A stretch of 64,000 bases of DNA, taken from positions 24,242,001 through 24,306,000 of the forward strand of contig OZ287752.1 of the NCBI GenBank assembly GCA_965649765.1, in the 5' to 3' direction. Positions 1,834 to 59,127 of the stretch are shown piece by piece. Made by a program: the position numbers and the translations under genes. Source of the stretch: Bispira polyomma (taxonomy: Eukaryota). Positions within the stretch are counted from its first letter, which is position 1, and each line of letters begins with the position of its first letter. Under the pieces are notes generated by a model. The model did not search any database, was not told the DNA's origin, and saw only the letters and a list, made by a program, of their open reading frames with translations.

Positions 1834-1888
1834 ATGATTACCAGTATACTAACTGTATTCTTTGGTTTACATTTGTTGGACAAAAAAG
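1834..1888 (+). CDS. Gene A exon 1, signal peptide MITSILTVFFGLHLLDKK
   Basis: 55-nt ATG..G|GT exon homologous to leaders of B, C, D; phase 1 joins V exon. Confidence 0.8.
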
Positions 1889-2232
1889 GTACTTCTTTAT
1901 AACTTATTAATATTTCGATATAAAATCTCCTTATTATATTTTATGCACTCTAATTCTTGTGCAGACTGGGTTAGAATATAAAGTATACAGTAGAAGCATA
2001 AGCTATAGCTAGTGTGTGTGATTTATAATATTTTATAATAAATTAGTATTCATTTTCATTCAAAATAATATATAAACTTTTGTCGTGTTCATTTCGTGTT
2101 TATTTAATATTAATATCTACATGTAATACTATTAGTTTACTAGCATATGTGATTGTGCATTATGTTGTTTGCTTCTGTTACATCTGTACATCCTTGAAAT
2201 GAGAATTTACATGCATATTTTTCTGTCCACAG

Positions 2233-2565
2233 TACTGGGCCAGGACCAAGTTGTGTACACAGAACTCTCATCTACTGCTAACCTTCCGTGTGGTTCTGCA
2301 TCCAGACTCTTCCCAACTGATGCTGTCAGAGTTTACTGGTACAGAGGGGATGATAATACAGACATCTCAGCCAGAATACTGCACCAGCAATTTATTAAAC
2401 CACAAACTATATACTACAATAACCACACCTCTCCTAAATACATGTGTAGTTCTGACAGAGTCCTCAGTATCAGTGATGCAGAGAACAATGATGGGACACA
2501 CTATGTATGTTCTGCATTTGGTGCATCAAGGTCATTCAATTTTCATGTAGAATTGATAACCTTAG
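2233..2565 (+). CDS. Gene A exon 2, V-like Ig domain
   Basis: 333 nt, AG/GT, phase 1-1; LPC...WYR...LSI...DGxxYxC Ig pattern. Confidence 0.9.
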
Positions 2566-3959
2566 GTGAGTTTTCATATATATACATGTATATATACTTA
2601 TATACTGTTTATGTAACCACTATGTTTTATCAAAATGAGGCAGAACAAATAATTTGTAACAAGGATGAATCAATTAAGAAACAATTATGCTGCTTTCTTC
2701 CACAGATGCTTTTATTTATGCATTAGCAGCCCCCTCCCCACATCATCCTTTAGTTATTGTCACACCTTTTGTTACTAATCTCTTTTCAGAAGGTCTGGTG
2801 CCACTTTTTTTAACAACAATGTGTCACTTTACAATATTATGTCACATGACTTATGTAGTAGGTCTTCAGCTTGATAAACAAACCTACAACATATCTCTTA
2901 GGCTGCATTGGTGGTTCCCCTCATTTTAAACTTAAAACTTTTTTACCCTGAAACTGGTGCATATATATTAACTTGTGAAAAATACAGACTTAACCCTATT
3001 CTTTTGCCATCTCGTGTCTTACAGCTGTTACCTCACTTAAAACTTGACTTTACTATTTGCATTTCACGTGACCTCTATATTAACATTCAGTGTACTGTCT
3101 ATAACAAATCCTCCTCAGGAGACTACTAACTCAGTCCACCAAAAATAATTTTGAATCTAATTATCAAAATTGAATACCTCTTTTAATCTCTGCTGTTCTT
3201 TCTGTCTATCATACCACTGGGCAATCACAAAACAGGTACCTTTTCAGTATAGCTTTACTTATATCCACCATAACCATTTAACATTGAATGCAAATGGGAA
3301 TGATGTTTTAAGAAATATTATTTTCAATCCCCTTCCTCACTGCAGCTTACTTATTTTGTTTTTACACGTTTTCGTTTGTGGGTAGATAGCCAAGTTTTCC
3401 TTGGCTCCCAACACTAGGCATTTTAGTTAACGTTCATAGTTTGTCTTATAGGGTTTAGGCAATCTAGAAAATTTTCTGGATGTCCACCGATTGTGTTCTA
3501 AGCATGTTGTTATGTATCAGTGTGTATAGTGGGTGCTGTTATTTTGTGTTGGTGACACGTTTATGTTCAGTTTGTGGACATACCAAATGTGTAACTATTT
3601 AGATTCATGTTAAGTTCATGGTTGATAGTACAAATGACCAAGTTATATTTTAAACCATGTCAGCTCATATGTTGATGGTCTGGAATTGGCATTATAATGT
3701 TAATAACATTTTCTACAGGGTGAATTGGATTGTTCTGTTGAAACTTGCCTGTTATCAGGGGATTACTGTTGCGTCATGTACATCTATTGGGGCTGTCCCA
3801 CTATCCTAATAATAGCTCCTGACTCACAGATTGTCCCAAATATTGTCCCCATTAATTTGGTAATTCTATTGTGCACTGATTCAAGTTATACTTTAACAGC
3901 ACCTGTTACCACTAGGGTGATATTTACCACATTTGTCCTTCTGACTTTGCTTGTGTCCA

Positions 3960-4046
3960 TTGACTACATTGTTGGCTCACTAATTCTGTTGTTGCACTAT
4001 AGAAAATGCCTAGCATCAATAAAGTGCATTAAAAATGTATAATAAT
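3960..4046 (+). mobile_element. L2 3'-end fragment
   Basis: Matches ...GATGCCTAGCATCAATAAAG...TTAAAAAT..ATAATAAT terminus of the 12637-13269 copy. Confidence 0.7.
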
Positions 4047-4110
4047 CAAAATTTATCAACACAGCAAACTTAGATAATGTTAAATTTTCCATTTGTATTA
4101 CTTATTTTAG

Positions 4111-4434
4111 TGTCTCCATCTCAACCAGTACTCAGTGGTTTAGTTATTGAAGAAAACAATCCCACAACAGTTCAATGCACATTACCGTCAGTAAAGCCAG
4201 GTGTGGGCAGTGTGGTGTTTACAGTGACTGTAGATCCAGACTTCAGTGTACAGAGTTCAGACAGTGATTTATCAGATGGATCAGCAGATCCTACAACAGG
4301 GGCCTTGTCTGTAACTTACTCAACACAGATCTCACTGCAGAGAAAACACAATGGACAGCAGGCTCTGTGTGAGGTGGTCTGGAGGGGTGGGGAGAAAACT
4401 GTGACATCAGAGAGGAAAACTGTGTTTGTAAGAT
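4111..4434 (+). CDS. Gene A exon 3, C2-type Ig domain
   Basis: 324 nt, phase 1-1; VQC..KP...HNGQQALCEV, nephrin/CD80-like C2 pattern. Confidence 0.9.
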
Positions 4435-4745
4435 GTAAGTAGAGTACAATTGTAAACATACAATATACAGCAGGCTGTGTGTTAGGTGAAAATGAAGGAA
4501 AACTTTAAAACACAATGGAGAGCAGGCTGTGTGTGATGTCTAAGTGTAGAAATTGTATGAAACACAATGGACAGCCGGTTTTGTGTGAATTGTAAGTGTA
4601 GCATGTGAATAAAAGTACAATAAACAGCAGACTATGTGTGAGGTACTAATACAGTACAAGTAGGAAATACAATGAACAGCAGACTTTGTATGAGATGTAA
4701 GTATAAACTTAGTATCAAATACAATGGACTGCAGACTATCACATG
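4435..4745 (+). repeat. Exon-3-derived ~50-57 bp minisatellite (gene A intron 3)
   Basis: Repeated AAACACAATGGACAGCAGGCTGTGTGTGAG..TAAGT units. Confidence 0.8.
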
Positions 4746-6093
4746 GCTTATGGAGGACTTCAGCCTACTATACCTCGGTATTAGTCTTCAGTGGGCTTGC
4801 ATATCAAGTTATTCTTTTTGTCTGTCATGCCACTGGCCAATCACAAAACGTGCACCTGTTCAGTATAGCTTTACTTATATCCACCATATTTATTTTCACA
4901 TTGAATGCAAACGATGGGGTGGAATTAATGAACGAAGGGGCTAAAGGGCCGAGTACATTAATTTAACCCCACTAGTTTAAATATTTTATTTCTATTCTAA
5001 AATGGTAAAACTTTTATTTGTTCATATAACAGACAATTGTCACCTTAAGTATATAATGTCATAGCCACATTTTATGCCTGATCCTCATACAAATATACTT
5101 GACAACTGAGTTTGAAAACCAAAAGGCATTTAAATTTTTTAAGAAAAAGGACAAATAGGCTAAGACATAATATCAATCCAAATTTAACATTTTCGGAGGA
5201 AAAAAATCAGACGAAACACATTTTGATCCTTTTTTGTATAGTTCCTGTGTTTTCCATCTCGCTTTAGTTCTATACGACACTAATACTACTAAATCTGTTA
5301 GTTCAGTTTCAAAATTAGCCCAACAGTTAAATATGCTAACTTCAGTTTAAATAAATATCCCAACTTTAAATGTGTTTATAAATGGTTATTCTTGTTCCAC
5401 CTTTCTTCCATCACAACCCTGGTCACCCAATCATGACCAAATCAAAATCATTCCCACTTCACACTTTATGTCCCCTTAACTTTCTACCATATTGAAACCC
5501 AAAGACAAAGGGTCAACAACTGATTTTCCCATCACCTCCCCTCTCCACAGCAACATTACATCTTCATACTTTCCTTATTCCTACTCAAGGCATACATGTT
5601 GCATACAACCGCTTTAAAACATTAGGCACGTTTGAGCCTGTTACTGTGTGGGGCCAGGTTCCTTCTCATAAACTACCCCTGGTGTGGCTACCGGGAGGCT
5701 TAGGAGCTCTGTGACGGGGGACATGCACCTGCTGGGCGAATAGGTGTCACAAGTCCTGGATTACAACTTAGCCACTTTTATCTTTTTGGTGAACTTCCAT
5801 TGCAATGGTGCCCTTTGACCTTCACTACATGTGGCCAAAGGTCATGATTTATATTGTTGAAATAAGTGGGTATACCCATGTCATATAATGACAAGTATTA
5901 CATCATCAGGTACTTCGTTCTGATTGTGCATAACTGTATGGATTTATATTAGTCCATTGTGATGACAAATATTGTTCACAACTTCACCTTCAAACATCTT
6001 CCTTCAAACTTTTCCTCACTGGTTCATTGATTGGGAACCGTTCGTGCATCTTACTGGTGTCCGAAATTTCCAACATTTACAAAAATGTGGAAA

Positions 6094-9000
6094 TTACTGG
6101 CACGACCCCTTTAGGGGGCCTGCTGTCTCAGTTCCTAACCCCTTTCCCTTCCTTTGTTAAGGGGACTATTCTTGTTCCCCATTCTGTCCATCCCTCATTA
6201 GCTATGAACCAATCACGATGCACAGGCTTCATGATTTTGTGTTTTTGGCCCCTGCTCAGGCACCATTTTCACCCCAAGTGTACAAGGGTAAACATCAAGT
6301 CAGAAAACATTTTAAAATTTATAATTGTGAACTCATGCTAGCGTTTTTATTGATTTTAGTGTTTATTTGTTTTTAGTTTACGCTCGTTCACACCACTACT
6401 GTATTATTATGGGACGGACTGCTAAGAAGACGTCAGGTAGCGCGCCAGCAAAGACCAAGTCAACCAGAAGGGGTAAAGTATCTGATCCGGTCGTCCGAAA
6501 TCTTAGAGTCCCTCTGTCCGAAGCCAGTAAATCTGATGTTCCTTCTGAGAACGTGATACCGGACAATACTGCCATGATGGCTATAATCCAAAAACTGGAG
6601 TCCGCCAACGCTGAGATACACAGAAGATTGGATCGAGTCGAGACGTCCAGAAATTCCATCCCATTGGGTTCGCCCCATAACCCTCCTCACAACGACACCA
6701 TGGCGGATCTTCGACATCCGGATCTACGTCCACAGCCCTCTGTCGGACTCGCCAGCACTCTCCCCATTCAGGGACAAGCTACACGTCAGATGCAGGCCAG
6801 TAACGACTACACGCGCGACAGCATTGTCCCGAGGGTGGATGTGTTAAGAAGTATTCCAGAAGTCAGTGCTGCCGTCAACTTGCGTCTTGCATCTTATGAC
6901 CAACGTTACCAGCAGGATCTTTCCCAAGGTAAGCCCCCCCCCCCCCCAGGCAGAAATCAGGTTGATTTAATTCTACTGACATTTGCCTTACTGAACCACA
7001 TGCTAGGTGGGCGAATGAAGATTGGGTGGGGGGTACGGCCCGGAAGCGACCACAGTTCGATGAACTCTCCATGCCCCAGTGGGCGGCCGGACAGCTATCT
7101 AACATTGCTCAAGTTTCTGATATTACCACCATGAAATGTATGCTACATCAGATGATCTATGCATTTAGAGACGCCAACGCTCTCCCTTGGCCTACCGTCA
7201 GAACTGCATGGGGACATAGCATGCAGGAATTGGAAGAAGGCAGGCTCGACTGGGCTAACCCCACCCAATGGTCATTAAATAGACTTAGTATTTCTCAGTT
7301 GACCCTTGCGAACGATCATACCACACAACAGGTTTCTCAGAAGCCCAAGGTAATCTGCAAGTACTTTAACTCAGGCTCTTGTAGCCATGTCGGAGATCAC
7401 AACCAGTACAAACATAATTGTGTGCATTGTTTCAAGGTTTTGAACAAAGAAAATAACCACCCGGAGTTCAAGTGCCTTAAAGCCAATTCTGCCAAAACTG
7501 CCTAGGATGGTGGTCGATGATTCAGGACAGACTCTGCCATTAAAAGTTGTGTAATTAATTGTGAAAGTAAAACCAATAGTGTAAGTTCAAATTGCTATGA
7601 CTCTTGTTTGACTTTGATAGTAAATTAGTTAAGACACAAGCTGCACATACAGCCAGACACTTTATGAACATTCTGTTAACAGTCAATGTAATGCCATATA
7701 TGATAATTTATATACTGTTTTGCCTCATTGTGAGAAGGCCTCGACTATGAATACTGCTGGTCTTACAAATTTCGGATTTCATAATGTACTCGAAAATTGG
7801 GGTCATCATGATTCTGGTAATGAGATTCACTCGGTTTTGGCCAACAGTGCCCCCTTATATGTTAATTATTGGAATATGGCCTGCAGTATCTCTGTCTTGG
7901 ATTTCTTATATGTCGATAATGGTGGGCATCACCCTGTTGTATTTTTGGACTTTCCTGACTATACCAGTGTTTCAGGTTTCTATTACCAAAATTGTTATAG
8001 GGACAATATCAGTTATGCTCCCCTAGGGAACATACCTAGCTTTCCTTTTGGCGTGTCTTATGTGTTCCAAGCTAGAATGCTGATTGATTTTAACTTTTTG
8101 CATGTTCAACAACTTAATCAACTTCAAAACAACTCTGCTAAATTAGCTCATGAAAACTACTTAAAAGATGTTAATTTCCTGTGGGTACGGGGATATGATT
8201 ATACCATTTATATGCAGAAAATCATTAATGGCATCATCAAGGCAGATGACGTCATGATTGATAATACTGCCAGTAATGAATGTTTTGTTAATAAGGCTAC
8301 TCAGGCTAGAATCACGTGGCGTTCCGATATTGTCTCCGATGGCTGTGAAGAGCTGTGCAGCTTAGTCATGGCTGATTCGTCTTCTTCAAAAAATAACACT
8401 AAAGAACCGGTTGTTTCTCACAAATCTGTTGGTTTCTTAAGCAAATCTGATACAAAATTTCAGTGTATTGGCCCTGATAAAGATTTTGTGGCTATTAATT
8501 CAATTAATGATATGTGTCTCATTGCTGACACCATAAGATCCACAGGTTTACCTAATTATGCTCAAGCTCGTATTCCCATTAGCTGTGGCTTGAATATCTC
8601 GGCTTGGGAACTTATTACACATAATCATCCTGACCAACTTATTTGTCAGTATTTAAAGTTTGGATTTCCACTATCCTTAAGTAGATCTTTTGAGTTAAAT
8701 CGCACAGATATAACTAATCATCACTCAAGGTTGGTTTTGAAAAATTATGTAGTCTATTAGATGATCTAGGTCTCCCCATGAATCCCAGTAAAATTTCTCC
8801 TCCATCCACTAAGGTTACTTATCTGGGCATCGATGTGGATATATCCGCAGGTACCATAAGTATCACACAAGAAAAAATTGACCAAATACACTTAGAGTGC
8901 ATAGAGGCATGTAGTAAGAACTGGTTATCCCGTACTAGGTTACGGTCCCTCTTAGGTAAGCTCCTTTATATACACAAGTGTGTTAAACCTGCTAGGTGCT

Positions 9001-11556
9001 TTATTAACAGGCTTCTTTCCGTTCTTAGAGCTTCCCCTAACGCCAAGAGGTTTAAGGTCACTGATAATATTAAACATGACCTTGATTGGTTTATTCACTT
9101 CTAACATGCATACAATGGTATTACCTATTTTAACCCTAAGGATATTGATTTCTCACATGAACTTCATCTGGACGCCTGTCTTACAGGTATGGGGGCCCTA
9201 TGGGGCCAGAAAATTTATTTCACACCCATTATTAACATTTTTGGTCAAACATTGGCCATTACACAGTTGGAGATGCTCAATGTTGTCATTTCACTTAGAG
9301 TTTGGGGGGAATCCTGGGCTCACCATAAGGTTACTTTTAATTGCGACAACCTGGCAGTTGTCCTGGTCGTTATGACCGGCAAGACTAGGGACCCATTCTT
9401 AGCTGCGTGTATACGCAATATTTGACTTATTTGCTCTATTCATGATATTACTATAAAAGTTCAACACATTCCAGGCAAGGATAATATATACGCTGACGCG
9501 TTGTCGCGTGTATATTCCACACGTCCTCCTGATCCACAAATTATGTTGGCTCTTAGTAAGCACACACGTAGAGATGTCCCCTTACACTATCATAATTTAG
9601 ATTTTAATATCTGATTACAGGTTCCACACAAGCATCATTGGCTTTGGGGGATGCTGCCATCAGGAGAATTCACACAGCTCTCAGACCTTCCACCACTGCA
9701 GCTTATACTTCGCAGTTTAGAACATTTCTTTCTTTTCTGCATTACGTTAACATGCACCATATCTCTATTCACTCCATTTTGGCCTTTTTGGAGTACTTGG
9801 CCCAGAATGACCTTTCCCCTAAAGTCATTAAAAACTACCTGGCTGCTTTAAGGTTCATGACCCAGAAGTTTAATATCCTCCCAGATATTTTCCATCACAA
9901 TTCCATCTCTCTGTTTATTCGTAGTTTGGTACACAACTCTCATTTCAGGCCCTCCCCCAAAGGGTTATTCTCCATCAAACACTAGTCCCTCATTTCTCAG
10001 GGCTGTTATATATCACAGGACCCCATTCTTTTTAGATCCATCTTTCTTGTGGCCTTTTATGGTTTTTTAAGATTGTCCAATATCGCCCCCCACTCTAGGG
10101 CCAAGTTTGATCCCACCAGACACATTCTTAGACAGGATGTGGTATTTGGTTCCCCTGGGGCCCACTTAATTATTAAGTGGGCTAAGAATATGCAGGATAG
10201 GACCTCCACACATGTTATACAGCTTCCTTCCATCTCTGTCCCTCACCTATGCCCAGTGCAGGCTCTTTCTGCGCTCCTTTCCTCTAGGAACCTATCCCCT
10301 ACTGCTCCATTTTTTGTTGGTTCAAAACCCCCTCATTTTCCTATTGTTGATTCACATGTCAGATCTGCCCTTAGGCAAATTCTACTCCACCTTGGGATTG
10401 ATCCTTCATTCCATGGTTTTCATACCTTTCGCAGGTCTGGCGCTACAGCAGCTTTTAATAATAACGTTTCCCTCCAAAATATTATGGCCCATGGCCTTTG
10501 GCGTAGTTTCGTCGTGTGGTCCTACCTCCAATCCACCTCCCAAGCTGCTTCCATTGTTCCCATTACTTTCTCCTCCATCGTCCCTTCCTCCATTTAGTTG
10601 GGTTTGGGCTCATATTAAAATCTCATTTTATAACATTTTAATATACTTTTACCTACCCTGTACATATATACTAACCTATACAGAATAAAATACCTCAAAC
10701 CTTATCCTGGCTTTCACTTAGCTCTCACCATAACTTCTCTTCCTTTTAACCTTCACCTTTGGGAACTGTTACTAGCACGACCCCTGTAGGGGGCCTGCTG
10801 TCTCAGTTCCTAACCCCTTTCCCTTCCTTTGTTAAGGGGACTATTCTAGTTCCCCATTCTGTCCATCCCTCATTAGCTATGAACCAATCACGATGCACAG
10901 GTTTCATGATTTTGTGTTTTTGGCCCCTGCTCAGGCACCATTTTCACCCCAAGTGTACAAGGGTAAACATCAAGTCAGAAAACATTTTCCACCACCCTCC
11001 CCTCCACCAAGTACTGGGTTCTTGGTCCTATTTTACTTCTTCTTGATCACTATTCCTTTCAAACGGGATCCACAGGACCCCTTAATTGGCAGTTACCTTT
11101 TTAGCGATCAGAGTTACTTTGTGCCGTTCTGGCATTTGTGGTTTCCACACCGTTACAGGGCTTTTGGGCTTAACCTCTGACTGCATACTTAAGGGTTTCA
11201 CCCTCTGCTTCTGTGACCTTATACGTCACTGGTTTTCTTGCTACTTGCCAGGGCCAGTCCCATTGTGGTGTTTTGTATTTTTAGTTGTTTTTTTTTTTTT
11301 TTTTTAATCTATCATCTGTAGTATTTACTTTTCATGTTTATTACTACTCTTATGTCTGCTTTTGTGGGCTTTACTTACTTGTTATCCCATTGTGGGTTCA
11401 TATTAAAATCTCATTTTATAACATTTTAATATACTTTTACCTACCCTGTACATATATACTAACCTGTACAAAATAAAATACCTCAAACCTTATCCTGGCT
11501 TTCACTTAGCTCTCACCATAACTTCTCTTCCTTTTAACCTTCACCTTTGGGAACTG
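6094..11556 (+). mobile_element. Ngaro-like YR retrotransposon N1 with split direct repeats, degenerate
   Basis: A1 6094-6313 = A2 10769-10988 (220 bp); B1 10605-10768 = B2 11393-11556 (164 bp), order A1-ORFs-B1-A2-B2; gag-like 6409-7505, RT/RNase H ~7720-9614 (RT core deleted near 8726), YR 9621-10597 (RxSN, HTFRRSGA, HGLW); no methyltransferase domain after RNase H. Confidence 0.93.
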
Positions 11557-11659
11557 CCAGACCAATTTTTGTATGACTAGGTCCTACCGCACAAATATGG
11601 AACAGTCACTCTTTAGCTACAGTGCTTTATATTCAGTTTAAATATTCCACAAAGAAACA

Positions 11660-12245
11660 TAATCTAATCTAATCTAATCGTACTTTTATAGCGCTTAATC
11701 TTTGTACAACAAATTCTAAGGCGCAACTAACCTAAGCATTAATCAAAAAAATCAGAAATGGGGGACGGATGGTGGTCATAACCAGAGAGACTACCGGGAT
11801 GGTTTCGATGGCTAAGGTGGAAAGGCCTGTTCGAAAAGGTAGGCCTTCAGTTTATTCCTAAAAGAGGAGAACGTTTGAGCCAAGCGAACATGATCAGGCA
11901 GGCTGTTCCATATGAAGGGGCCATCATGAGCAAGGCAATGATTGAAATGTACTTTGGACTTGTGGATGCGAGGGTCGAAAGTGGGAATGTTAAGATATAA
12001 CTTATCAGGGTTACTGCGCCTAGTCCTGACTGAGCATGTATATTTGGATAGATGGGGGCTGAAATAGGTGGGTGATCCAGAATTTAGAAATTTGTATATA
12101 ATTGTTGCAATTTTGAAAGCAACACGATATTTTATTGGGAGCCAGTGGGGTGACTTAAGTACAGGAGTAATATGAGAAAATTTAGAAGTTTTGGCCACGA
12201 TGCGAGCCAATTAGTGTTGAACGTTCTGAAGACGTTTGAGGTCAC
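11660..12245 (-). mobile_element. L2 LINE 3' fragment, second family, (GATTA)n tail
   Basis: ORF 11812-12210 SHITPVLKSPHWLPIKYR...WNSLP...FRNKLKAYLF; tandem tail at 11660-11679. Confidence 0.9.
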
Positions 12246-12634: not shown

Positions 12635-12636
12635 GT

Positions 12637-45800: not shown

Positions 45801-48800
45801 TTTAGGGTACATCCTAATTCTTTCCCTGGCACTTGAAAAAGGTTTCTATTATCCCACAGAGCATCTTTTAACTGCCTTTCTTCCGACTCAGTAAGCGAAC
45901 CATTGCTCCATTTAAACAACTCTTCAAATTCTTGTCTTGAAATGGTGTTTTCTGTTTTGGTCTCATAATTACCAGCATACCCACTTGACTCTATGACTTG
46001 TACACAATCCTTCTCTCCAAGCACCTCCAGGTGTGCAACACAATCACCCTTTTCAAAACACATAGGAATATCTTTTGTATTCCTTAGCTCAATTAGCACA
46101 AGCGGATTTCTTGGTTTGATGTTAGTAATACTACACCTGATATTGGTAGATTGTAAAATTCCAAAAGGACAGGGATCTATTTTTACTACAGCAACAACAT
46201 CTAATGGTTCTTTTAGAGTTCCATAAAGCAATGTCTCTTCTAGTGGATTCAGCTGATAATCAGTTTGCATGTACACATCAAGTGTCTCTGGTATTTTGAT
46301 CGTGTTCCTGTCAAAGTCCAAGCATACACCAAATGCTTCTAGGAAATCTATTCCAAGTAAGACTGGGTAGGGCATGCAAGTAACATACTTCAATTTCCAA
46401 CTAATGATCTGACTTCCTATAGTAAATGCAAATGGAATCACCCCTTGTATGGCTGTATTTCAAGTATGGGAAACATCTGTAAAAGTTCAGGTCCTGCCAG
46501 AGATATAGTAGCGCCTGAATCAACCAAGGCATAAACATTCTTATTATTCTTTTTTAACTTCAAAAATGTAAGTCCACTAGTTCTATTGTCATTAGGGGTG
46601 AGGGTGAGAGCAACTAAGACCTTCTCTGTTGCGCCCAAGACCCCACCTGAGGCGCACTCCAGTTTAAATGAGCATCCTGTTGCTTGAAACTTTGTTGGTT
46701 TCTTTGAAATTGTGGACAATGCCGTTTAATATGACCTCTTCTATTGCATTTGAAGCACACTAAATCTCCATGTTGAGGACGTCTCACACAATTACTAACA
46801 GTATGACCGTAAACTTGACATCTATTACAGAACATTTGGCAAATTCCTCTCCCTGGTGCAGTGTTTTGATTGGGCTTATCCCTGGTCAAGCTACTCTTTA
46901 GAAAAACCATGTCCTCCTCTGTTGATTGATAGTTTCCTGGAGCTCTCCAATTAGCTTTGTAAAATCTTCCAATTTCTTTAGGTGGTTTTCTTATAAAACA
47001 TATATCCTATTACCTTGGTGGTCTTTAGGCTTGAGCTTCTCAATACTTTCAGCCAGCCTGGCTTTGCTTTCAAGATCATCAACTGTTTATGGCTGGTGGC
47101 CTATAACAAAAGCTTTAATGCCAGGCAATAATCCATGTAGGATGATACTCCTGGTCTCAGCTTCTCCTTTTTGTAGTTGGTCACATCTCTGTCTCACATT
47201 AGTAATACAACTCTCCATTGATTCTGTAGGGAACTGTACCCTCGAGAAAAGCCCTTGCTCCTTAAGCCATGTCAGGTTGTTTGCATTTATAAACTTCTCA
47301 GAGAATGCTGCGTGCACTCCGTCCTAATCTTGATGAACATCTTCTGGCAAACTCCCATACCAAACCTCCGCAGCCCCTTCTAAAAGCAATCGATACATTC
47401 TTGATTTCCTCTGTTCATTCATATTACAGTACTCTGCATAACTCACAAAGCGTTTCATCCATCGTTTGGCATCTTCACAGGAAGTTCCTCTAAAAGGAGC
47501 AGGCCGTAATGCAGCAGTTTCTGGAAAAGGTCCATGTTGTTGAATAGCATCCTGCAACTGTGTGTGATATTCCTCTTGTTGATCTCTTTGGTCTGCAAGT
47601 CGTTGTTGAAGCTGATCCTGGAGCCCACCCTGTACATCCCCTTGATTAGCGAGTCGGTGGAGTTGAGCCCCCAATTCCTCAATATTTTGAGCCATTAGAT
47701 CTAGATATGCCATCCTTGTCCTCAAGTGATAGTAACTTGTTACCCTCGGAGGCTTTGTTTGAGCTTCCAGGATGCTAAATTAAAATTATAAGCAGTTAAA
47801 ATTACAGTTGCTGTTGTCAGCACAGTTCAAATTCATACTGTGGACACTTCTATTGCCACTGGGTAGCAACCATGTTCTGCTCGGATATGTGTTGTTACTT
47901 CCTTGGTAGTTACCCTTTTAAATTTACAGTAGGGGCAGCCATATGTCCATGCAGTAGTGGTGACATTTGACCAATGTATTGAAATGGCCCTGATACCAGA
48001 AAGTGTGGTCTCTTCATCTGCGTAAGGGAAGCTGGTAGAACTAACATCGGATGATTATATATTATCTTGCATGTTTGTTCATGTCTCATGACTTCTTATG
48101 AAATACCCGGCATCTCCACCAATTGTTATGAGGTTATTTTCAGTGGTCAGTCTTGACCACTTGCTTGTCAGTTCAACCCCATATCGGCTGGGATCTTTTA
48201 TCTCAGAGAAGTATGAAGACAAGAAAAGATAAACTTGATCACTGTCACAACATTTATTAGTAAACAGCACGACACTTACATAATAATTATCCAAGTAAGA
48301 GATGTAACCATAACAGTTACATGTATCCAACTGACTCCCACTAAGCTTTATTAGACTTTCTCTAGCTTCACTCCAGCCTCCACTCCAACTAACTGTGTGT
48401 CTCTGGACTAAGCTTTATATAGTGTTAATAGCATTTATAGGGATCTAAAGTTATTTATGGAATTTAGAATGTCATGTGGGTATGAAGTTTAGGAAGTTCC
48501 TTTACATAACATTCCATTGGTGTCAAGTGAGTTATGGCACTGGACACCAATGGAATGTGATGGCATGTATTGAATGTTATGTAAGAACAAGTTCTAATGG
48601 AATTTTGGTCATAACAATACCTACCGTTAGAGTGTCTATGATTTACAGTAATTTTATATACAGGTGTTGATTCCACAGGGGACTGCCGGTTCACTAATAT
48701 CATTAGGTCCACCTTAAGACATTTTAAGGATTTCACGTTTAGTTATACTTTCTGTCTGTCCATCAATAAAAAAATACATAATCTGAAATTGGAATTGATG

Positions 48801-51800
48801 TATTTTTTTTTATATTTTGTGGGTACATGTGCATATATATAAACTAGTATATATGAAACACTATATGAGTAACACCTGAGTAACACATATGACGTTGCAC
48901 AGATACCTTATGTCATTTGTTCAAATAAAAGACTTTAGAACAAATTTGATAATAATTATATCATGTATGTGTGTATACCTTTTTACATGTAGCCATAGTG
49001 CAAGCAGTACTTATATCCATATTTAAAAATACATACAAGTCAAAAAAAATTACATAACAACAAGCGTAAGTATAGTTTCCTTAATCATATTGTGTACATT
49101 GTTTTGTTTTATCTGCTTTATTATTACTTATTACTTAGAATGAATGTTTACTCAGATTAATAAGTTGTTGTTGCTTCAAGTTTTCGAAGTTTAGAAACTA
49201 AGTTATTATTTCATTATAAGTTACTTACATATTACAATAATGTAAAATTAATAAATGAATGTAATTTAATAATAAATCTAGGTAATGTTAAATTTACTAT
49301 TTTAAAAACTTATTTTAGTTTCTCCATCTCAACCAGTACTCAGTGGTTTAGTTTTTGAAGAGAACAATCCCACAACAGTTCAATGCACAGTACAGTCAGT
49401 AAAGCCAGGTGTGGGCAGTGTAGTGTTTACAGTGACAGTAGATCCAGACTTCAATGTCCAGAGTTTAGACAGTGATTTATCAGAGGGATCAGCAGATCCT
49501 ACAACAGGAGCCCTGTCAGTGAATTACTCACCACACATCTCACTACAGAGAAAACACAATGGGCAGCTGGCTGTATGTGAGGTGGTCTGGAGAGGAGGGG
49601 TAGGAACTGTGACATCAGAGGGGAAAACTGTGGCTGTGAGATGTATGTATATATTAAGTACGAAACACAATAGACAGCAGGTTGTGTGTGAGATGTGAGC
49701 ATAGTATAAGTATAACAACACAATGGATAGCAGGCTGTATGTAAGATAAAAGTATAGTATAAGTATAAAAGCACAATAGACAGCAGGCTGTGTGTGAGGT
49801 GTAAGTATAGTATAAGTATAAACACTATGAACAGCAGGCTGTGTGTGAGGTGTAAGTATAGTATAAGTATATAAAATTCGATGGACAGCAGGCTATGTAA
49901 AAATTGTTAGTATAGTGTAAGTATTAAAACTCAATGGACAGTAAGCGACAATGGACAATGCGAAGTGTAAGTATAGTACAAGTATATAAAACTCAATGGA
50001 CAGCAGGCTGTGTAAAAATTGTTAGTATAGTGTAAGTATAAAAACTCAATGGACAGTAAGCTGTGTGTGAGGTGGTCTAGATCGAAGGGAACTGTAACTT
50101 CAGCATATGAAAGTGTGGCTGTGAGATGTAAGTATAAGTATGAAAGACAATGTACACCAGACTGGGTATGAGCTGTAAATATAGTCTAATTAGCAAAATA
50201 CAGTCAAGTCTAAGTGTGATATGGTTAGAGCATACTACTAACAAAATTAATGATATATCAGATTTATTGATGATATATCAAAAACAGTTTTGTAATTCAA
50301 AATATTTGTTGATATGATAAAAACTGTATCAATGTCAGTATACATGAGGGTTATTATATGGTTTGTTTGATAACCTTGTTTTATAAGGTGTTCTACTATT
50401 GCAGTTTCAGCGACCAGTATCATCATGACTCAGTCACCCAGTGGTTTAGTCCCAGAGAACACACTAATAACCTTTACCTGTTTGACTGATGAAGCCAATC
50501 CTACTGCTACTGTGACATGGACTGTAAATGGTAGTAGCACCAGTTCTACCAGTGACTCTACTGTAGATGATGGTGTTAACAGTGCGGTGAAAAAAGAGAG
50601 TGTATTGATACTGACTGCAGAGAAGGGATTTCATAATAAAACAGTCAAATGTATGGTCAGTGAGAACACAGGAGTGACAGCTGCAGAAACATTGAACATA
50701 GCGTGTAGGTATTTGTAGCATTTACATGAAATTGTCCCTCTTACTTTAACATATTTAAATAAAGTGCTAAAACATGTGATTTATGCTTTAACTAGCACAA
50801 TTGTTTGAAAGTTAAACATTGTGTTATCGGCAACTATTTCAAGATCACTCTAGTAGTATCAGATTTATTCAGAATGTATTTTTGTACCTAATTTAACTGA
50901 TCATCACTATTTAAACAAATGTTTGAAGTGAATTTTTTAAATATTGCCATACAAAGCCTAGCGAAGATATATTATTCATATTGCTCAATACCGTTAAAAT
51001 TTTCTGTTCATTAAATAAGAAACTGTTATCTAAAGACTGAAATGATCAACCAGAATTATTACAATTAATGTCATAATTGTTTTTTTAATCAGCAGAAAAC
51101 TATTGAAAGCAAAACATACAGCAAAACAAAAGACCAGTAACTGCTTCATATATGCTACTGTCATTTTAGTATTAGTGTGTGGTTAGCAAGGCTCTAATGT
51201 TATGTATTTCTGTGTTTGCTATGGTATAATTAAATTCAGTGCGTGATATAATCGGAAAACTACCCAAGTGATGTATATTAAAAAATTATATGACGAAAGA
51301 ACATAAACAGTACTATATAAGCCTAGGAGGGTGAGTATTGTGCATTTTATCTTTTTAAGTCATATCATTTTTAATATACACCAGAAGTGTAGGTTTTCGT
51401 TTTTATCCACTTATAAAATATCATTACATTAAGTTATATAGTTAAAAATATAACATAAACAGTCCGAAAAGGGTGTAAAATATTAAAAATTCAAGACAAA
51501 ATAAACAAAAAGTACTGACTTGCTACCTTAAAGAATTAACTTCAAATAGAAACTTCTACCACTCTAAAAATCGCATTTTGTTCACAATATAATTGAATAA
51601 TGCTTATATTTTCTACATATCGAAATTTTTAAACAATAAGTTGTTTACTTTGACAGTATTAAAACAAACCCAAACTGTATAAATTCTTTGTTTACGTTTC
51701 AAAACCTTCCATTATGACGTCACAATACAAATTTGAAAGCCAAGAAGTACAGAGTTGGTACCATAAAGAATTAACTTCAAACTCATATTTATAAGGCACT

Positions 51801-54322
51801 AAAACATACCAGTTTAACATACCATTATGTAGTTCAAGGTTTATATTTTATGTTAACTACACTTTTCTTTGTATCACCAGGTCTGTATCAGCCAAACGTT
51901 ATTATGAGGTCACAGTGGATAATAAATGTATTTTTATGTTTCTATTTATCAATGCTCAAAATTTTTTACATTTTAGTTCCCCATGAAATAATGATAACCC
52001 AGAGCCTATCAAATCCTGTTGTTAATGGAAATGCTTTAATATTATCCTGTGAAGCCTACGGTGGTAATCCATCAACTGTTTTATCATATAAATGGACTTT
52101 TGTTCCCCGTGATCAAGTTTTTAGTGTTCTTACTGGAGATTCAAACAGACAGATTGTATTCATTGCACAAGATAAACATGCTGGGGAGTATAGTTGTGTG
52201 GCAACTAATGCTGGTGGAAGTAGCTATAGAACCCATAATGTCATCATAAACTGTGAGTATCAGCAAGACTGTGAGCGTTTGTCTAAGATAGATATTTATC
52301 TGAACCTTATTTTGTGAGTTAAAACATTATTTTCAAACTGATAACATATATCCCTGTAATGTTTATTTCAGATAGCCCAGTCGATGTAAGTACAGCTTTT
52401 CAAAAGGTATTATATGTAAGCACTGACAGTCCAGCAGTCTTGAACTGTTCAGTAAAATCTCACCCACAGATCAGTCAAGATGACATCACAATAAACCACA
52501 TGAACTCAAATTTGAATACACAGTTGATAGAAGTTACACCAGTCATAGAAAAAATAGACGAGGTCCTGGTGCAAATAATTTTCAACCAACTGAGTATCAG
52601 TGACATCGGATTATACCAGATGATGGCCAATAATGGTGTAGGAAATGACTTACTCATTGAAATGGATGTCAGAGAACAAGGAAGTATATTTGAGATATAA
52701 TTATATTGACAGTATTGTTGTTCAACCAATATGCAATGGAAATGTAATTAAAGTTTTAGTTTATGTCTGTAAGTACCAATGTATTAAATTGACAAGTAAA
52801 CATATTACAGGTATTCCTGAACCTCCACAACTGTTGAGGGTAGAATATGCCACTGCCATTTCGGTTACATTTTCATGGATCACTGGAAGATCTGGAGGGC
52901 CAAGCCAGACATTTACTATATATTATAGACAGGAAAATGACACCAATATATCCTTCCAAAGTGATATTGTAGATCGAGGTTTATACACAACTGTTACTTA
53001 CACCTTACAGGGTTTACAACCAATAACTTTATATTACGTCAGTGTTAGAGCTTTAAACACATATGGAAGGAGCCTTGATAAAAATGATCTACAAATAAGA
53101 ACTTTAGGTAGGTAAACAATTAAGGATGAATGAATAATGGACATTAGTTTGATGCTGCACAATAACAATTAAACAATAGGCATAATTATTCTTAAGTAAA
53201 ATTTATGATGCATATTTATTGCATAACATTTGTACATTTATTAGCTAAGATTCTTAAGTAATTATTTACTTTTCATTTTTTTAACTTTTTTCAGAAATGC
53301 CTGTCCTGGATGGTCCACTCACTGCAGAGGTATATTTTGGTTTTACAGTGTTCTTTTGGCCTAATATCACAGGAATCTTTTCCAGAATCGTTTTGATGAA
53401 GTGTGCTGACTTGGCTGACAATTGTCAAACTATGCACACAACAATGGCTAGCCCTTCACATTTTGTGATAGAGGATCCTTCAGAAAGTGATATCTTTTTT
53501 ATATGTATTTACCAGGGAAATGAACTAGTTTTTAAAAGAAAATTTGAAATACAAGATAAAACAGGTATTAATATTAACTGTCTGTAATCTTACAGATTAC
53601 AGCTCAAATGCAATACTTGATATTTTATGTAGAAGATATTGTAGTTAACTTTGCAGTCACAGAAGCAATAGCATATTTAAACATTTAATTTACTTCATTT
53701 ATTAGAGCAATCTGAAATCACTCCCACTGAGTGTAATGCTGACAAATCCTTACTGGCTGGAGTGATAGTTCTTGGAATCGTCATCTGTGTAGGTGTCATT
53801 GGAACTATTACTTTCTATTGTTGTATGAAAAGGAGACATGCCTCATCTAGTAAAAATGATTACAAAAAGGTAATTCTATATAGTAATATTCTATAAGTCA
53901 TTATGTCGATAAACTTCTATAACAAATATATCTTAATTATCTGTCTAAAAGTTCAAACTAAACATTTTGTGGTTTGTATATGTATGAGGTGTATGCTGAG
54001 TGTGTGAAAATTATCTTTGATATTTCATCTTTCATTCAGAAAGGTGTGGGTGTTGTGTATTACAATACCACCGATCAGAGACTTAAAATATCTGAATATG
54101 AGGAAACTAAATCTGAAGAACCTAAGCCCACACCGGAATACACTGACTTACAGGTAATATTACCATTGATGAATTATACGTCAATTACAAAGTAACATCC
54201 ATGTTTAGTGTATTTCTATATGTTTAATACGTCTATTGTAAATTTGTAAGGTTTATTGTGTTTTAATTTTCTTACAGATTACAGCATATGAAGAATTTGG
54301 CCCACCTGTGCAAAGGATTTAG
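30787..54322 (+). CDS. Gene C: predicted intact receptor (~828 aa) joining leader+V at 30.8-31.6 kb to exons 3-11 at 49.3-54.3 kb across a 17.7-kb TE-filled intron
   Basis: All 11 exons open and phase compatible (2487 nt); the long splice is inferred. Confidence 0.7.
31277..31609 (+). CDS. Gene C exon 2, V-like Ig
   Basis: 333 nt, phase 1-1, open. Confidence 0.92.
32150..32790 (+). mobile_element. Old L2 fragment
   Basis: Nucleotide similarity to the 375-1260 and 12637-13269 copies (LKLNPDKTEF-coding start, family 3' UTR). Confidence 0.75.
32990..37400 (-). mobile_element. Ngaro-like YR retrotransposon N2, degenerate
   Basis: gag-like 37353-36144 (CKFYQKGTC...HVCATC), RT 35810-34725 (YGFPL, SPFMTR, KLDISHAFRQ), RNase H (ELDACLTGLGG, HILGKLNVTADLLSR), YR 34174-33356. 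Confidence 0.9.
37440..39730 (-). mobile_element. Ngaro-like YR retrotransposon N3, 5'-truncated, near-intact RNase H and YR
   Basis: ORF 38875-39693 (RT thumb + RNase H) and ORF 37865-38851 (FRASN, HTFRRSGA, HGTW, WRY). Confidence 0.92.
40425..40525 (-). mobile_element. L2 3'-end fragment
   Basis: Reverse complement of the 13165-13269 3' UTR with (TAG/TAA)n tail. Confidence 0.8.
40685..41340. repeat. Two related CAGCACATTCCGACGTC(G/A)GCC units, probable DNA-transposon subterminal repeats
   Basis: 40688-40750 resembles 41152-41220. Confidence 0.45.
41380..41780 (+). mobile_element. PIF/Harbinger transposase C-terminal remnant
   Basis: Frame-broken translation YFLVGDDA..LAQNMMK / IFNYRLSSVHRIVESAFCIL / IVLAFACLHNLM matches the HARBI1-type FNYRLSRARRxVExAFGIL...LHN signature. 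Confidence 0.8.
41801..41867 (-). mobile_element. tRNA-derived SINE head or tRNA pseudogene
   Basis: Minus strand TGGTCCAGTGG (A box) ... GGTTCGACT (B box); acceptor stem does not pair. Confidence 0.6.
43830..44244 (+). pseudogene. Dead promoter/leader/intron-1 cassette of a fifth paralog (ATG deleted, V exon missing)
   Basis: 44005-44120 aligns with 21270-21425 with a deletion over the ATG; 44205-44244 aligns with 2045-2084; ETS motif reads GAGCAAGT at 43942. Confidence 0.75.
48104..48121 (-). promoter_or_regulatory. Primer-binding site complementary to tRNA-Ala 3' end
   Basis: Minus strand TGGTGGAGATGCCGGGTA, 2 nt from the LTR end; + strand reads ...CCCGGCATCTCCACCA. Confidence 0.8.
48124..48616 (-). 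repeat. 5' LTR (493 bp) of the Gypsy element
   Basis: TGTTATGA...TCATAACA inverted termini; minus-strand TATA (~48415) and AATAAA; host intron homology resumes at 48617. Confidence 0.85.
49319..49642 (+). CDS. Gene C exon 3, C2-type Ig
   Basis: 324 nt, open. Confidence 0.92.
49645..50185 (+). repeat. Exon-3-derived minisatellite (gene C intron 3)
   Basis: Same unit as in genes A and B. Confidence 0.85.
50405..50704 (+). CDS. Gene C exon 4, C2-type Ig
   Basis: 300 nt, open. Confidence 0.9.
51240..51930. mobile_element. ~0.7-kb insertion in gene C intron 4, unclassified
   Basis: Flanks align with gene B intron 4 (~25730-25800) but this block has no counterpart. Confidence 0.5.
51977..52252 (+). 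CDS. Gene C exon 5, I-type Ig
   Basis: 276 nt, open. Confidence 0.92.
52372..52683 (+). CDS. Gene C exon 6, atypical Ig
   Basis: Ends 52680 (GA) or 52683 (GT). Confidence 0.85.
52811..53107 (+). CDS. Gene C exon 7, FN3
   Basis: 297 nt, open. Confidence 0.92.
53295..53564 (+). CDS. Gene C exon 8, degenerate FN3-like
   Basis: 270 nt, open. Confidence 0.85.
53706..53869 (+). CDS. Gene C exon 9, transmembrane LLAGVIVLGIVICVGVIGTITFYCC-MKRR
   Basis: Phase 1-0, translated by hand (not in ORF track). Confidence 0.85.
54040..54153 (+). CDS. Gene C exon 10, cytoplasmic KGVGVVYYNTTDQRLKISEYEETKSEEPKPTPEYTDLQ
   Basis: 114 nt, phase 0-0. Confidence 0.85.
54278..54322 (+). CDS. Gene C exon 11, ITAYEEFGPPVQRI*
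   Basis: TTTTCTTACAG acceptor; homologous to TMTYEDLGPAL*. Confidence 0.8.
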   Translation: MTAYEEFGPPVQRI

Positions 54323-56553: not shown

Positions 56554-57040
56554 ATTAATAATATATAACTCCAAACACCTTCTTCAATCTCCAAGGCCAG
56601 TATAAGTCATATCTCATCTACCTGTTAAGGTTGTTCGCTACCATTTTTTTACACCACAGATTTTCAAAAAAAAATGATGAAAATCTTGATTAATATAATT
56701 TTGATCAAAAATATAAAAAAAATATCTATTAATAATATATAACTCCAAACACCTTCTTCAATCTCCAAGGCCAGTATAAGTCATATCTCATCTACCTGTT
56801 CAGGTTGTTCGCTACCATTTTTTTACACCATAGATTTTCAAAAAAAAAATTGATGAAAATCTTGATCAATATACTTTTGATCAAAAATATAAAACAACTA
56901 TGTCACACCAGGTTCTTTTAAGGCAAAGTAACACATCATTCCCCACAGACAATTTAACAAAGCACATCTTCTGCATTCATTTTCATCAAAATATATTGAA
57001 ATTTTTATTTTGAGGAAAAATGGTAGGTAACAACCTTAAC
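56554..57040. repeat. ~174-bp tandem duplication plus a partial inverted third copy
   Basis: 56554-56727 repeated from 56728; 56978-57040 resembles the reverse complement of the GTTAAGGTTGTT..CTACCATTTTT segment. Confidence 0.8.
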
Positions 57041-58404
57041 TCTAAGTAACACTGGATTATAAATTTTAACAAAGTTAGGTGGATTGATATGTTAGTTTTT
57101 ATTGCTATGTTAGTTTTTCATGTAGTACAGAGGTTAGAAAATATTTATATTACTGTGAGAATAAAATTATATTGCACCATGTTCGTGATGTTATTAAACC
57201 AATATAACATGATTTATATAAAGACATAACAACCCCCCAAAAAACCGAAATTTGGAATAGTCATATTACTTTGTACGGGTAAGCAAGATCTTATCTAAAA
57301 TTTTATTTAATTTTTGGTTGTTATCCCTATACTCATTTAAGACTATCGTATATTTTGCTAATATATATCCCATGTTTAAGTTAACTCTATTTACATCAAT
57401 TACAAGTCATAACGTAATTTAAGATTACCTAAAAGTTCTATATATGTTTCTCTCTAAGGTTATCGCAACTAACTTTACCAAGTAAACCACCCCTGTGGAT
57501 GAATTTAAGATTAACTTAACCCTTTAAGGTAGCCTTTGTTTATCTAGTTTGTATATATCTGATATGCCACCTACAACTGTATCTGCACGGACATTCATAT
57601 ACAACCAATGGTTGATGAACTGTGCAAAGTAGCCACACACAGGGCTAGCGTGGTAGATGCAACCCCTAGGTATTGACCACAAGCCAACAATCTGAGAATT
57701 CAAGAAAACAAGAAGGGACCAGTAAATAACTATGGGATGCACTGACCACACTAGAACTGTGTGTGGCTACATTGCAAAGTCACAAATGTTAAAACCAAGA
57801 ACATTTAAATGAACCATCAAACATCCAAATTGTATTTATGTTTTAATTTTACCAAACCTGTATACATATACTAAAACATAAAACCAACCCAAACACTTTA
57901 CTAAATTCCCAGTGTGGAGTATTTCATGTACTTTGTATGTGGAATCGTTTATGTTTGTATTTATAGCTTTAATTATGGTAATGGGGTGTGCCAAAATGTA
58001 CCATGTCTGAGTCATAATATTCTCTTGTATGTCTTACGTGAAGCAAACAATATTTTTACTGTTTTCAATGCGAACACTTGCTTTATGTTACATATGTTTA
58101 TCATGCCTCTTCTATCATTTAAAGTTAACTGTACACTGACCTTTAATTCAATTTTAGTCAAGATAAAATAAGGCCCTGTATTGAACGTATTGTTTTCTAC
58201 ATAAACCTCGCCAGGGATCTGTTTTAAATAAAATACTAAATGATTATTACAGTTCGGAGGACAACATATATATATTCAAATCATAAACAGTAAATATTGC
58301 ATGGTACTTATATAACCTAATATAATCAAATAAAGTGTTCTTAGTTGTGCGTCTTAGTTTTCATTCAGTTTTTGTCACACATTGGCTTCAAACCATTTAT
58401 TCAT

Positions 58405-58412
58405 GAGGAAGT
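58405..58412 (+). promoter_or_regulatory. GAGGAAGT ETS/PU-box-like motif upstream of gene D leader
   Basis: Positionally conserved across paralogs. Confidence 0.4.
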
Positions 58413-58510
58413 AAAGTAATACTATATACAGTATTATCATGTGATTTTCTATGGAGTATATGGTATATAGTGTAACAGTTAGGTATTAATGTGCAAGGAT
58501 AATGCATAAA

Positions 58511-58565
58511 ATGATTACCAGTATACAGTCTGTGTTATTTGTTTTACTTTTTGTGGAGAAAAAAG
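58511..58565 (+). CDS. Gene D exon 1, signal peptide MITSIQSVLFVLLFVEKK
   Basis: 55 nt, G|GT donor. Confidence 0.8.
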
Positions 58566-58794
58566 GTACCTCTTTATGAATTATTGCCTATTCAATATAG
58601 AATCTCCTTATTATATAATATGCACTATTATGCTTATAGAACATAGATATGTCTTGATAAGATATAAACATAAAATATAGCACTATATGTGATATGTTAC
58701 TATTATATGTGATTGTGCATTATGTTCTTAACATCCACAGAAGTAAATATTCATCATTGAAACGAGTAGTACATATTGTAATTTTTGTCCATAG

Positions 58795-59127
58795 TACTCA
58801 GCCAGGACCACATTGTGTACACAGAACTTTCATCTACTGCCAATCTTCCCTGTGGTTCTACATCCAGACCATTCCCAGATGATGCCACCAGATTTGACTG
58901 GTACAGAGGGAATGATTATACAGACATCTCAGCCAAAATACTGTCCTACAGGTTCAGTGATTCATCCATCAGATACTACAATGACTACTCCTCTCCTAAA
59001 CACACCTGTAGTTCTGACAGGGTCCTTAGTATCAGTGATGTAGAGAACAATGATGGGAGAAAATATATCTGTTTAGCATCTGGTGCTTTGGTGACATTTT
59101 CCTTTAGTGTAGAATTGATAACCATAG
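58795..59127 (+). CDS. Gene D exon 2, V-like Ig (rest of gene not in window)
   Basis: 333 nt, phase 1-1, open. Confidence 0.92.

What the first reader, a model, noticed from the sequence alone, without database searches (positions are those of the whole stretch)
1834..59127. Tandem cluster of diversified Ig5-FN3-TM tyrosine-motif receptors: candidate invertebrate immune/allorecognition locus
Seen: four leader+V cassettes, three sets of exons 3-11 and one dead cassette, all co-oriented, one domain per phase-1 exon, with TM and multi-tyrosine tails. Known: 5 Ig + FN3 + TM with the C2 TDExNPxAxVxW and FN3 GxxGGxxQxF motifs is the nephrin/Sidestep type; clustered V-Ig/FN3/TM genes with tyrosine tails, birth-and-death turnover and chimerism are traits of recognition loci such as Hydractinia Alr and vertebrate paired receptors. 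Inference: a lineage-specific recognition receptor family derived from a nephrin-like scaffold. I recognise no named ortholog.
Basis: partly seen in the sequence, partly recalled or inferred. Interest (0 to 1): 0.88.

Follow-up and report, generated by a model that had tools for sequence, protein, structure and literature searches.

The report
Ig receptors paired with dead kinases
These are four neighbouring surface-receptor genes from a family of about 70-80 in an unidentified marine invertebrate; their binding tip changes fast while the rest is conserved, and the same outer part is joined either to a short tyrosine 'off-switch' tail or to a dead tyrosine kinase, as expected of an immune-type recognition system, although no expression or ligand data exist.

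Summary
Observation confirmed: four leader+V cassettes, three sets of exons 3-11 and one dead leader, all on +. Gene A is a pseudogene. B is intact and chimeric. C is intact only if a 17.7-kb transposon-filled intron is spliced. D continues beyond the window as an intact, shorter receptor.
Corrections: there is a second FN3-fold domain (exon 8). The tails have no ITAM; a canonical ITIM is present in A, D and E only.
The cluster is part of a family of roughly 70-80 genes on C5. About 26 carry a tyrosine pseudokinase, and some of these share V/exon 3/C2 with the window genes at 67-85% identity. The tail exon aligns with the pseudokinase juxtamembrane exon. The nearest outside relatives are tandem Ig-FN3-FN3-like RTKs and kinase-less forms of Lingula.
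The V exon is the diversification hot spot: modest positive selection here (M8a/M8 p=0.009), and 16/108 amino-acid changes against 4/538 elsewhere between two 98.8%-identical copies in a related species.
Best reading: paired, immune-type recognition receptors related to a nephrin-like RTK. Function and expression are untested; allorecognition is unsupported. The scan noted this family before on other DNA of this genome.

The parts
1834..17583 (+). Gene A, pseudogene, 11 exons: 1834-1888, 2233-2565, 4111-4434, 12350-12634, 13759-14034, 14437-14745, 14858-15154 (TAG), 15357-15622 (net 4 nt short, donor AT), 15796-15968, 16094-16207 (TAG), 17548-17583 (ITIM IxYxxL)
6094..11556 (+). Young DIRS/Ngaro-type retroelement in intron 3 of A, with split direct repeats (6094-6313 ~ 10769-10988; 10605-10768 ~ 11393-11556; 98%)
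   Evidence: classed from ORF motifs and repeat layout (own knowledge); no Pfam hit for its two ORFs tested
12637..13269 (+). 3' fragment of a LINE with an (AAT)n tail and 7-bp target duplication, inserted into the exon-4 donor of A
21316..28083 (+). Gene B, intact, about 828 aa: leader 21316-21370, V 21852-22184, Ig 23688-24011, C2 24892-25191, Ig 25804-26079, Ig 26174-26482 (or 26485), FN3 26604-26900, FN3-like 27045-27314, TM 27463-27635, tail 27759-27872 and 28048-28083
27045..27110 (+). Recombination breakpoint in B: C-like upstream (82-92%), A-like downstream (mostly 80-93%); the same switch is present in paralog E
24254..24650 (+). 52-53-bp minisatellite in intron 3, built from the 3' end of exon 3 and donor-like sequence (also 49635-50071 in C, and near 4343-4734 in A)
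30787..31609 (+). Leader (30787-30841) and V exon (31277-31609) of gene C, of the G/E2 V type; open frame
33356..47725 (-). Transposon block between C's V exon and exon 3: two decayed DIRS-type elements (about 33356-37353 and 37865-39693) and a Gypsy-type element (about 44474-47725)
43815..44244 (+). Dead cassette: upstream region and leader remnant with the ATG deleted and no V exon; probably the original head of exons 3-11 of C
49319..54322 (+). Exons 3-11 of gene C, all open: 49319-49642, 50405-50704, 51977-52252, 52372-52680 (or 52683), 52811-53107, 53295-53564, 53706-53869 (TM), 54040-54153, 54278-54322; C-type tail
58511..59127 (+). Leader (58511-58565) and V exon (58795-59127) of gene D; the rest lies 8.6-15 kb past the window end: exon 3, two C2 exons, FN3-like, TM, A-type tail ending in ITIM IxYxxI; all open

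Best explanation
The window holds kinase-less members of a large tandem family of Ig/FN3 type-I receptors related to a nephrin-like receptor tyrosine kinase (Cad96Ca/FGFR-like kinase). Shown: architecture V-Ig-C2(n)-Ig-Ig-FN3-FN3-like-TM; two back ends in the family (a 55-60 aa tyrosine tail, or a juxtamembrane region plus a dead kinase); exon shuffling that couples similar front ends to different back ends; divergence concentrated on the V exon. Inferred: the V domain binds a variable non-self or altered-self ligand through its GFCC' face; Src-family kinases phosphorylate the tail tyrosines; the terminal ITIM/ITSM-like motif and the upstream YxxL recruit SHP/SHIP-type phosphatases and the YxN site a Grb2-type adaptor; the pseudokinase paralogs with similar V domains act as counter-signalling or scaffold partners. 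This makes a paired-receptor-like immune recognition system.
For: Family size and turnover: 81 FN3, at least 150 C2, 56 exon-8, 38 V and 26 pseudokinase exons, mostly C5 10-27.5 Mb; pseudogenes A, E, H, Z. Paralog I shares V/exon 3/C2 with B at 67/83/78% but ends in a kinase with HRD>HFC, DFG>GFD and no GxGxxG. B's closest V (75%) lies 13 kb upstream of another such kinase exon. The tail exon aligns with I's juxtamembrane exon (shuffle p 0.0003-0.02 for own-genome tails), and the Lingula kinase-less P0276 ends where the kinase of P0275 begins. V selection: M8a/M8 p=0.009, M7/M8 p=0.02, M1a/M2a p=0.05; no M1a/M2a signal in exons 3-7. In the related species, V differs at 16/108 aa against 4/538 in exons 4-10 between 98.8%-identical copies (Fisher p 2e-11), at sites overlapping this genome's candidate sites (p=0.01). 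ITIM in A, D and E. Oyster Ig/FN3/ITIM and Ig/ITAM receptors act in haemocytes (PMC11841013, PMC6994640).
Against: No RNA run exists for this organism, so neither expression nor tissue is known. B (MxYxxL) and C (TxYxxF) miss the strict ITIM; no ITAM and no charged TM residue in the genes read. The selection test is borderline, uses 8 sequences on a star-like tree, and gene conversion can inflate it; with 11 sequences M1a/M2a is not significant (p=0.16). V dN versus dS between L025 and L026 is not significant (p=0.14). The tail-to-juxtamembrane similarity is short and Tyr/Glu-rich (profile test p=0.02; not significant for the related species' tails). Nephrin/SYG-2/Sidestep-type proteins are neural and junctional adhesion molecules (own knowledge).
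Confidence: 0.55

Rival explanations
1. A neural or tissue cell-adhesion code, like Sidestep/Beat, Dpr/DIP or SYG-1/SYG-2, in which diversified V domains give wiring specificity.
For: Nephrin/SYG-2-type C2 and FN3 domains; such families are expanded and differ mainly in the N-terminal domain (own knowledge).
Against: Many pseudogenes, copy turnover within species (V and C2 exons of the related species group apart from those of this genome) and V hypervariability between near-identical copies are unlike the conserved wiring families.
Confidence: 0.15
2. An allorecognition (histocompatibility) locus like Hydractinia Alr, using allele-specific homophilic V-V binding.
For: V first, FN3-fold domain next to the membrane, one domain per exon, tyrosine motifs, pseudogenes and a multi-megabase cluster, as in the Alr complex (PMC9546547); V is the most variable exon.
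Against: No sign that the animal is colonial or fuses; no allele data for this species (one search shows identical contigs in both samples); no sequence link to Alr was tested or found; Alr tails mostly carry ITAMs, these do not.
Confidence: 0.12
3. Decoy or modulator chains for RTK signalling in growth or wound repair: kinase-less and kinase-dead chains tune an active RTK by heterodimerising.
For: The kinase is closest to the Lingula RTKs and then to Cad96Ca among the kinases scored (the set was seeded with a Lingula query); Cad96Ca/Stitcher is a wound-response RTK in Drosophila (own knowledge).
Against: A conserved endogenous ligand would not drive rapid V change or 70-80 copies; no active kinase member was seen among the 26 hits, though active ones would be too distant for that search.
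Confidence: 0.1
4. Mostly neutral duplication debris in a transposon-rich region, with only a few working copies.
For: Many broken or orphan copies; gene F has open exons 3-11 but no V nearby; overall omega is high (0.25-0.65).
Against: Private changes in C and G are depleted in replacements compared with pseudogene E (N/S 1.3-1.4 against 2.7; small counts); tyrosine positions, cysteines and exon phases are kept across two species.
Confidence: 0.08

Closest known systems
Lingula anatina tandem Ig-FN3-FN3-like RTKs and kinase-less forms (P0275, P0276, P0277, P0146; automatic NCBI names TYRO3, hemicentin-like)
   Same: V/C2/I Ig chain, nephrin-type FN3, a second FN3-fold domain with the same W, C-C and Y positions, TM, tyrosine juxtamembrane region; tandem copies; both kinase and kinase-less members.
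   Different: The Lingula kinase P0275 keeps GxGxxG, HRD and DFG; the copies read here are dead. Only 20-30% identity. I found no paper on the Lingula family.
Nephrin / SYG-2 / Sidestep
   Same: C2-set_2 domains and FN3 type, 5-Ig count of B and C, tyrosine tail.
   Different: Extra FN3-like domain, variable Ig number, kinase-bearing members, 70-80 copies, no YDxV Nck sites; nephrin's first Ig matches best at another locus (C5 76.7-76.9 Mb).
Hydractinia Alr family (PMC9546547)
   Same: Clustered V-Ig-FN3-fold-TM genes, single-exon domains, pseudogenes, tyrosine motifs.
   Different: Alr have 1-3 Ig domains, ITAMs in many tails and demonstrated allorecognition; no kinase members are described in the passages read.
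Oyster CgNCAM1, CgIgIT2, CgIgR (PMC11841013, PMC6994640)
   Same: Lophotrochozoan Ig(/FN3)-TM receptors with ITIM or ITAM tails that act in haemocytes through SHIP2 or Syk.
   Different: Described as single genes, not a diversifying cluster; sequence homology to this family was not tested.
Vertebrate paired receptors (KIR, LILR, SIRP, Siglec, CD300)
   Same: Tandem clusters, birth-and-death, conversion between members with different tails, fast-evolving N-terminal domain, ITIM tails.
   Different: Their activating partners use a charged TM residue with DAP12/FcR-gamma; here the alternative back end is a dead tyrosine kinase. Analogy, not homology.

Membership tests
Nephrin/Sidestep | C2-set_2 Ig domains of the SYG-2/nephrin type | tested here: met
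   Pfam C2-set_2 E 1.5e-9; best PDB hit SYG-2 E 4e-15
Nephrin/Sidestep | A single FN3 directly before the TM segment | tested here: not met
   A second FN3-fold domain lies between
Nephrin/Sidestep | One-to-one or few-copy orthology across phyla | tested here: not met
   About 70-80 copies with species-specific grouping of V and C2 exons
Lingula-type Ig-FN3-FN3-like RTK family | Cys-pair FN3-like domain after the FN3 | tested here: met
   A profile built without Lingula rows hits only Lingula proteins among about 390 held (20-26 bits); W, C, C, Y invariant
Lingula-type Ig-FN3-FN3-like RTK family | Members with a tyrosine kinase domain | tested here: met
   Paralogs I and Z carry PK_Tyr_Ser-Thr exons; the window genes themselves have none
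Active receptor tyrosine kinase (paralogs I, Z) | GxGxxG, HRD and DFG motifs | tested here: not met
   No glycine loop, HFC for HRD, GFD for DFG
ITIM inhibitory receptors | [ILVS]xYxx[ILV] in the tail | tested here: inconclusive
   Met in A, D and E; B has MxYxxL, C TxYxxF, F and G TxYxxL
ITIM inhibitory receptors | Recruitment of SHP/SHIP after phosphorylation | not testable with these tools
   Needs biochemistry
ITAM / activating paired receptors | Yxx[IL]x6-9Yxx[IL], or a charged TM residue | tested here: not met
   Spacing is YxxL-x4-Yxx[LIF]; TM segments of A-G are uncharged
Paired-receptor clusters | Similar ectodomain front ends coupled to different signalling ends | tested here: met
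   B/C/A chimera; I and the 24.96-Mb gene against B
Paired-receptor clusters | Diversifying selection on the ligand-binding domain | tested here: inconclusive
   M8a/M8 p=0.009 but M1a/M2a p=0.05-0.16; strong V-focused divergence in the related species
Paired-receptor clusters | Expression on immune cells | not testable with these tools
   No RNA run on record
Allorecognition loci (Alr type) | Extreme allelic polymorphism and allele-specific homophilic binding | not testable with these tools
   Only two samples of one study, identical where laid; L025/L026 may be alleles or recent duplicates

The most novel reading that the evidence does not exclude
An invertebrate paired-receptor system built from a receptor tyrosine kinase: ITIM-type receptors arose by cutting the RTK after its juxtamembrane tyrosines, the full-length partners were kept as dead kinases, and the two classes keep exchanging fast-evolving V front ends so that both recognise the same changing non-self ligands.
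Probability: 0.3. Interest if true: 0.8.

Novelty: new variant of a known kind. Interest (0 to 1): 0.55.

Why it matters
Clusters of diversifying Ig receptors with tyrosine motifs are known from vertebrates, Hydractinia and, as single genes, oysters. This family would add a large lophotrochozoan example, and it suggests a route by which ITIM-type receptors arise: truncation of an RTK. It also suggests a kind of partner (a receptor pseudokinase) that I did not find described (the library is incomplete). Intact B, D, G and I give direct constructs for ligand and phosphatase tests.

Tried and rejected
Rejected: ITAM reading (spacing 4); plain nephrin or Sidestep orthology; assembly artefact (copies differ by 12-35%, and identical contigs lie over B in three runs); active RTK for paralogs I and Z.
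Led nowhere: naming the organism. A COII piece has no relative above 70%, and the genome size found no genome note. The exon-3 fold was low-confidence (pLDDT 57) and its fold search uninformative. The Atlas gave only generic V-set clusters. No RNA runs; DNA contigs gave no allele data.
Spliced models were searched exon by exon by reference; the joined search was left out. 
Full report
Observation. B translates to about 828 aa without a break. C does too, but only if its V exon (31277-31609) is spliced across 17.7 kb of transposons to exon 3 (49319). A is dead: stops in exons 7 and 10, a net 4-nt loss and an AT donor in exon 8, and a LINE fragment with a 7-bp target duplication in the exon-4 donor. 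D runs out of the window; its remaining exons are open and give a shorter receptor (V, Ig, two C2, FN3-like, TM, tail). The window is G000:C5:24242001-24306000.

Domains. Pfam gives V-set, C2-set_2, Ig and fn3 for exons 2, 4, 5 and 7, and a weak I-set for exon 6. Exon 3 has the two cysteines and weak similarity to the C2 exons and to SYG-2, but its model was poor, so its Ig status is probable, not shown. Exon 8 has no Pfam hit, yet folds confidently (pLDDT 91) as a beta sandwich whose top PDB matches are FN3 domains. The architecture is therefore Ig5-FN3-FN3-like-TM. The C2 profile's best solved relative is SYG-2, and eel nephrin's FN3 finds this cluster, which supports the nephrin-type scaffold.

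Family. Exon searches of the genome give 81 FN3, at least 150 C2, 56 exon-8, 52 exon-3 and 38 V matches, nearly all on C5 between 10 and 27.5 Mb. These are lower bounds and not gene counts. Many paralogs have long runs of C2 exons. Following a lead from earlier notes, I read paralog I (C5 25.44-25.46 Mb). It shares V, exon 3 and C2 with B at 67, 83 and 78%, has the same FN3 and FN3-like exons, and ends in a tyrosine kinase domain with no glycine loop, HFC for HRD and GFD for DFG. A second such gene, Z, apparently broken, lies 30-40 kb upstream of the window. The catalytic-loop exon has 26 copies at 66-100% identity, 23 on C5; 9 of those 23 have a listed FN3 exon within 15 kb upstream. B's closest V in the genome (75%) lies 13 kb upstream of one of them; that link is by position only.

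Relatives elsewhere. The FN3 exon's closest hits come from a related species in ENA assembly ERZ22147071, which has the same genes exon for exon. Among named proteins, Lingula anatina has tandem Ig-FN3-FN3-like-TM receptors, some with an intact kinase (P0275) and one ending just after the juxtamembrane tyrosines (P0276, which could also be an incomplete model). A profile of exon 8 built without them picks out only these Lingula proteins. Sea stars have Ig-FN3 RTK clusters with a different membrane-proximal domain, and the kinase is of the Cad96Ca/FGFR-like type. The tail exon of B, C, D, E and G aligns with the start of I's juxtamembrane exon at p 0.0003-0.02 against shuffles. This suggests, without proving direction, that the kinase-less receptors are truncated RTKs.

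Shuffling. B is C-like up to about 27050 and A-like from about 27100, and paralog E at 69.9 Mb shares the switch. Among the same six genes, synonymous distance averages about 0.43 in V but 0.15 in exon 3 (my means of the pairs), so exon 3 is homogenised while V is not. V and C2 exons of the related species group together rather than with their structural counterparts here. C's pre-exon-3 intron resembles B's and its V is of another type, so the dead cassette is probably C's original head. C's exons 3-7 show fewer private replacements than pseudogene E (N/S 1.3 against 2.7, small counts), but orphan gene F also has open exons, so C's status is undecided.

Selection. My own codon models show modest positive selection in V (M8a/M8 p=0.009, M7/M8 p=0.02, M1a/M2a p=0.05) and no M1a/M2a signal in exons 3-7. 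Candidate sites lie on the C strand, CC' loop, C'-C'' region and FG loop, by position relative to the canonical Cys, Trp and Cys. Conversion can inflate such tests. Independent support comes from the related species: L025 and L026 are 98.8% identical over 18.5 kb, yet differ at 16 of 108 V residues against 4 of 538 in exons 4-10 (p 2e-11), with flanking introns near 1%. Five of the 16 sites coincide with the 11 candidate sites here (p=0.01). Whether the two are alleles or recent duplicates is unknown, and dN over dS within V (about 2) is not significant.

Tails. All tails keep four tyrosine sites: YxN, YE, YxDL and a terminal YEx[LIF]. The last two are spaced by four residues, too short for an ITAM as defined in PMC9546547. 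The terminal motif is a strict ITIM in A, D and E, ITSM-like in F and G, and a near miss in B and C. No TM segment read has a charged residue.

Mechanism and verdict. Shown: anatomy, family size, two kinds of back end, shuffling, V-focused change. Inferred: variable non-self ligand, phosphorylation of the tail, phosphatase recruitment, and pairing with the pseudokinase chains. I put this at 0.55, against neural adhesion 0.15, allorecognition 0.12, RTK modulation 0.10 and neutral debris 0.08. No RNA data exist. The organism is an unidentified lophotrochozoan. It works like a paired-receptor cluster, but it is not a member of the nephrin, Alr or vertebrate paired-receptor families by the features tested. 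Paper searches found no description of this family or of an ITIM/pseudokinase pairing. The scan has noted the same family at other places in this genome, so the window is one more piece of it. Spliced proteins were searched exon by exon; the joined search was left out. Novelty: new variant of a known kind; interest 0.55.

Noticed in passing
window 26482-26490 and 52680-52688; L001/L025/L026 9663-9672: The exon-6 donor lacks GT at the homologous place: GA in B, C, E, F and G (a weak in-frame GT lies 3 nt on), and GG in three copies from the related species (next in-frame GT 51 nt on). Possibly a tolerated non-canonical 5' splice site.
   Followed up: partly
window 24254-24650, 49635-50071, 4343-4734: A 52-53-bp minisatellite made from the 3' end of exon 3 and donor-like sequence; partial exon-3 copies recur after exon 3 in other paralogs. 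It may promote conversion of exon 3 or give alternative donors.
   Followed up: partly
window 6094-11556: Young DIRS/Ngaro-type element with 98% identical split direct repeats inside gene A; more tyrosine-recombinase elements at about 33356-39693 and 60525-63920.
   Followed up: no
G000:C5 24.200-24.213 Mb (L007-L009): Broken pseudokinase receptor gene Z directly upstream of the window, same strand as the cluster.
   Followed up: partly
G000:C5 16.93-16.96 Mb and 11.41-11.48 Mb: Paralogs with long runs (10-15) of C2 exons, so ectodomain length varies widely in the family.
   Followed up: no
L016 4141-4437; L001 4626-4850; L002 2199-2955: Some paralogs carry two V exons in tandem, either a divergent second V or a recent duplicate.
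   Followed up: partly
L024 (G000:C75): Mitochondrial order rrnS (opposite strand), cox1, cox2, a non-coding stretch with a long hairpin, atp8; code 5; COII at most 70% identical to anything found.
   Followed up: partly
G000:C5 76.72 and 76.93 Mb: Best matches to the first Ig domain of eel nephrin; a candidate true nephrin/Kirre-type locus apart from the cluster.
   Followed up: no
window 56548-56901: Recent 174-bp tandem duplication (95%) between genes C and D.
   Followed up: no
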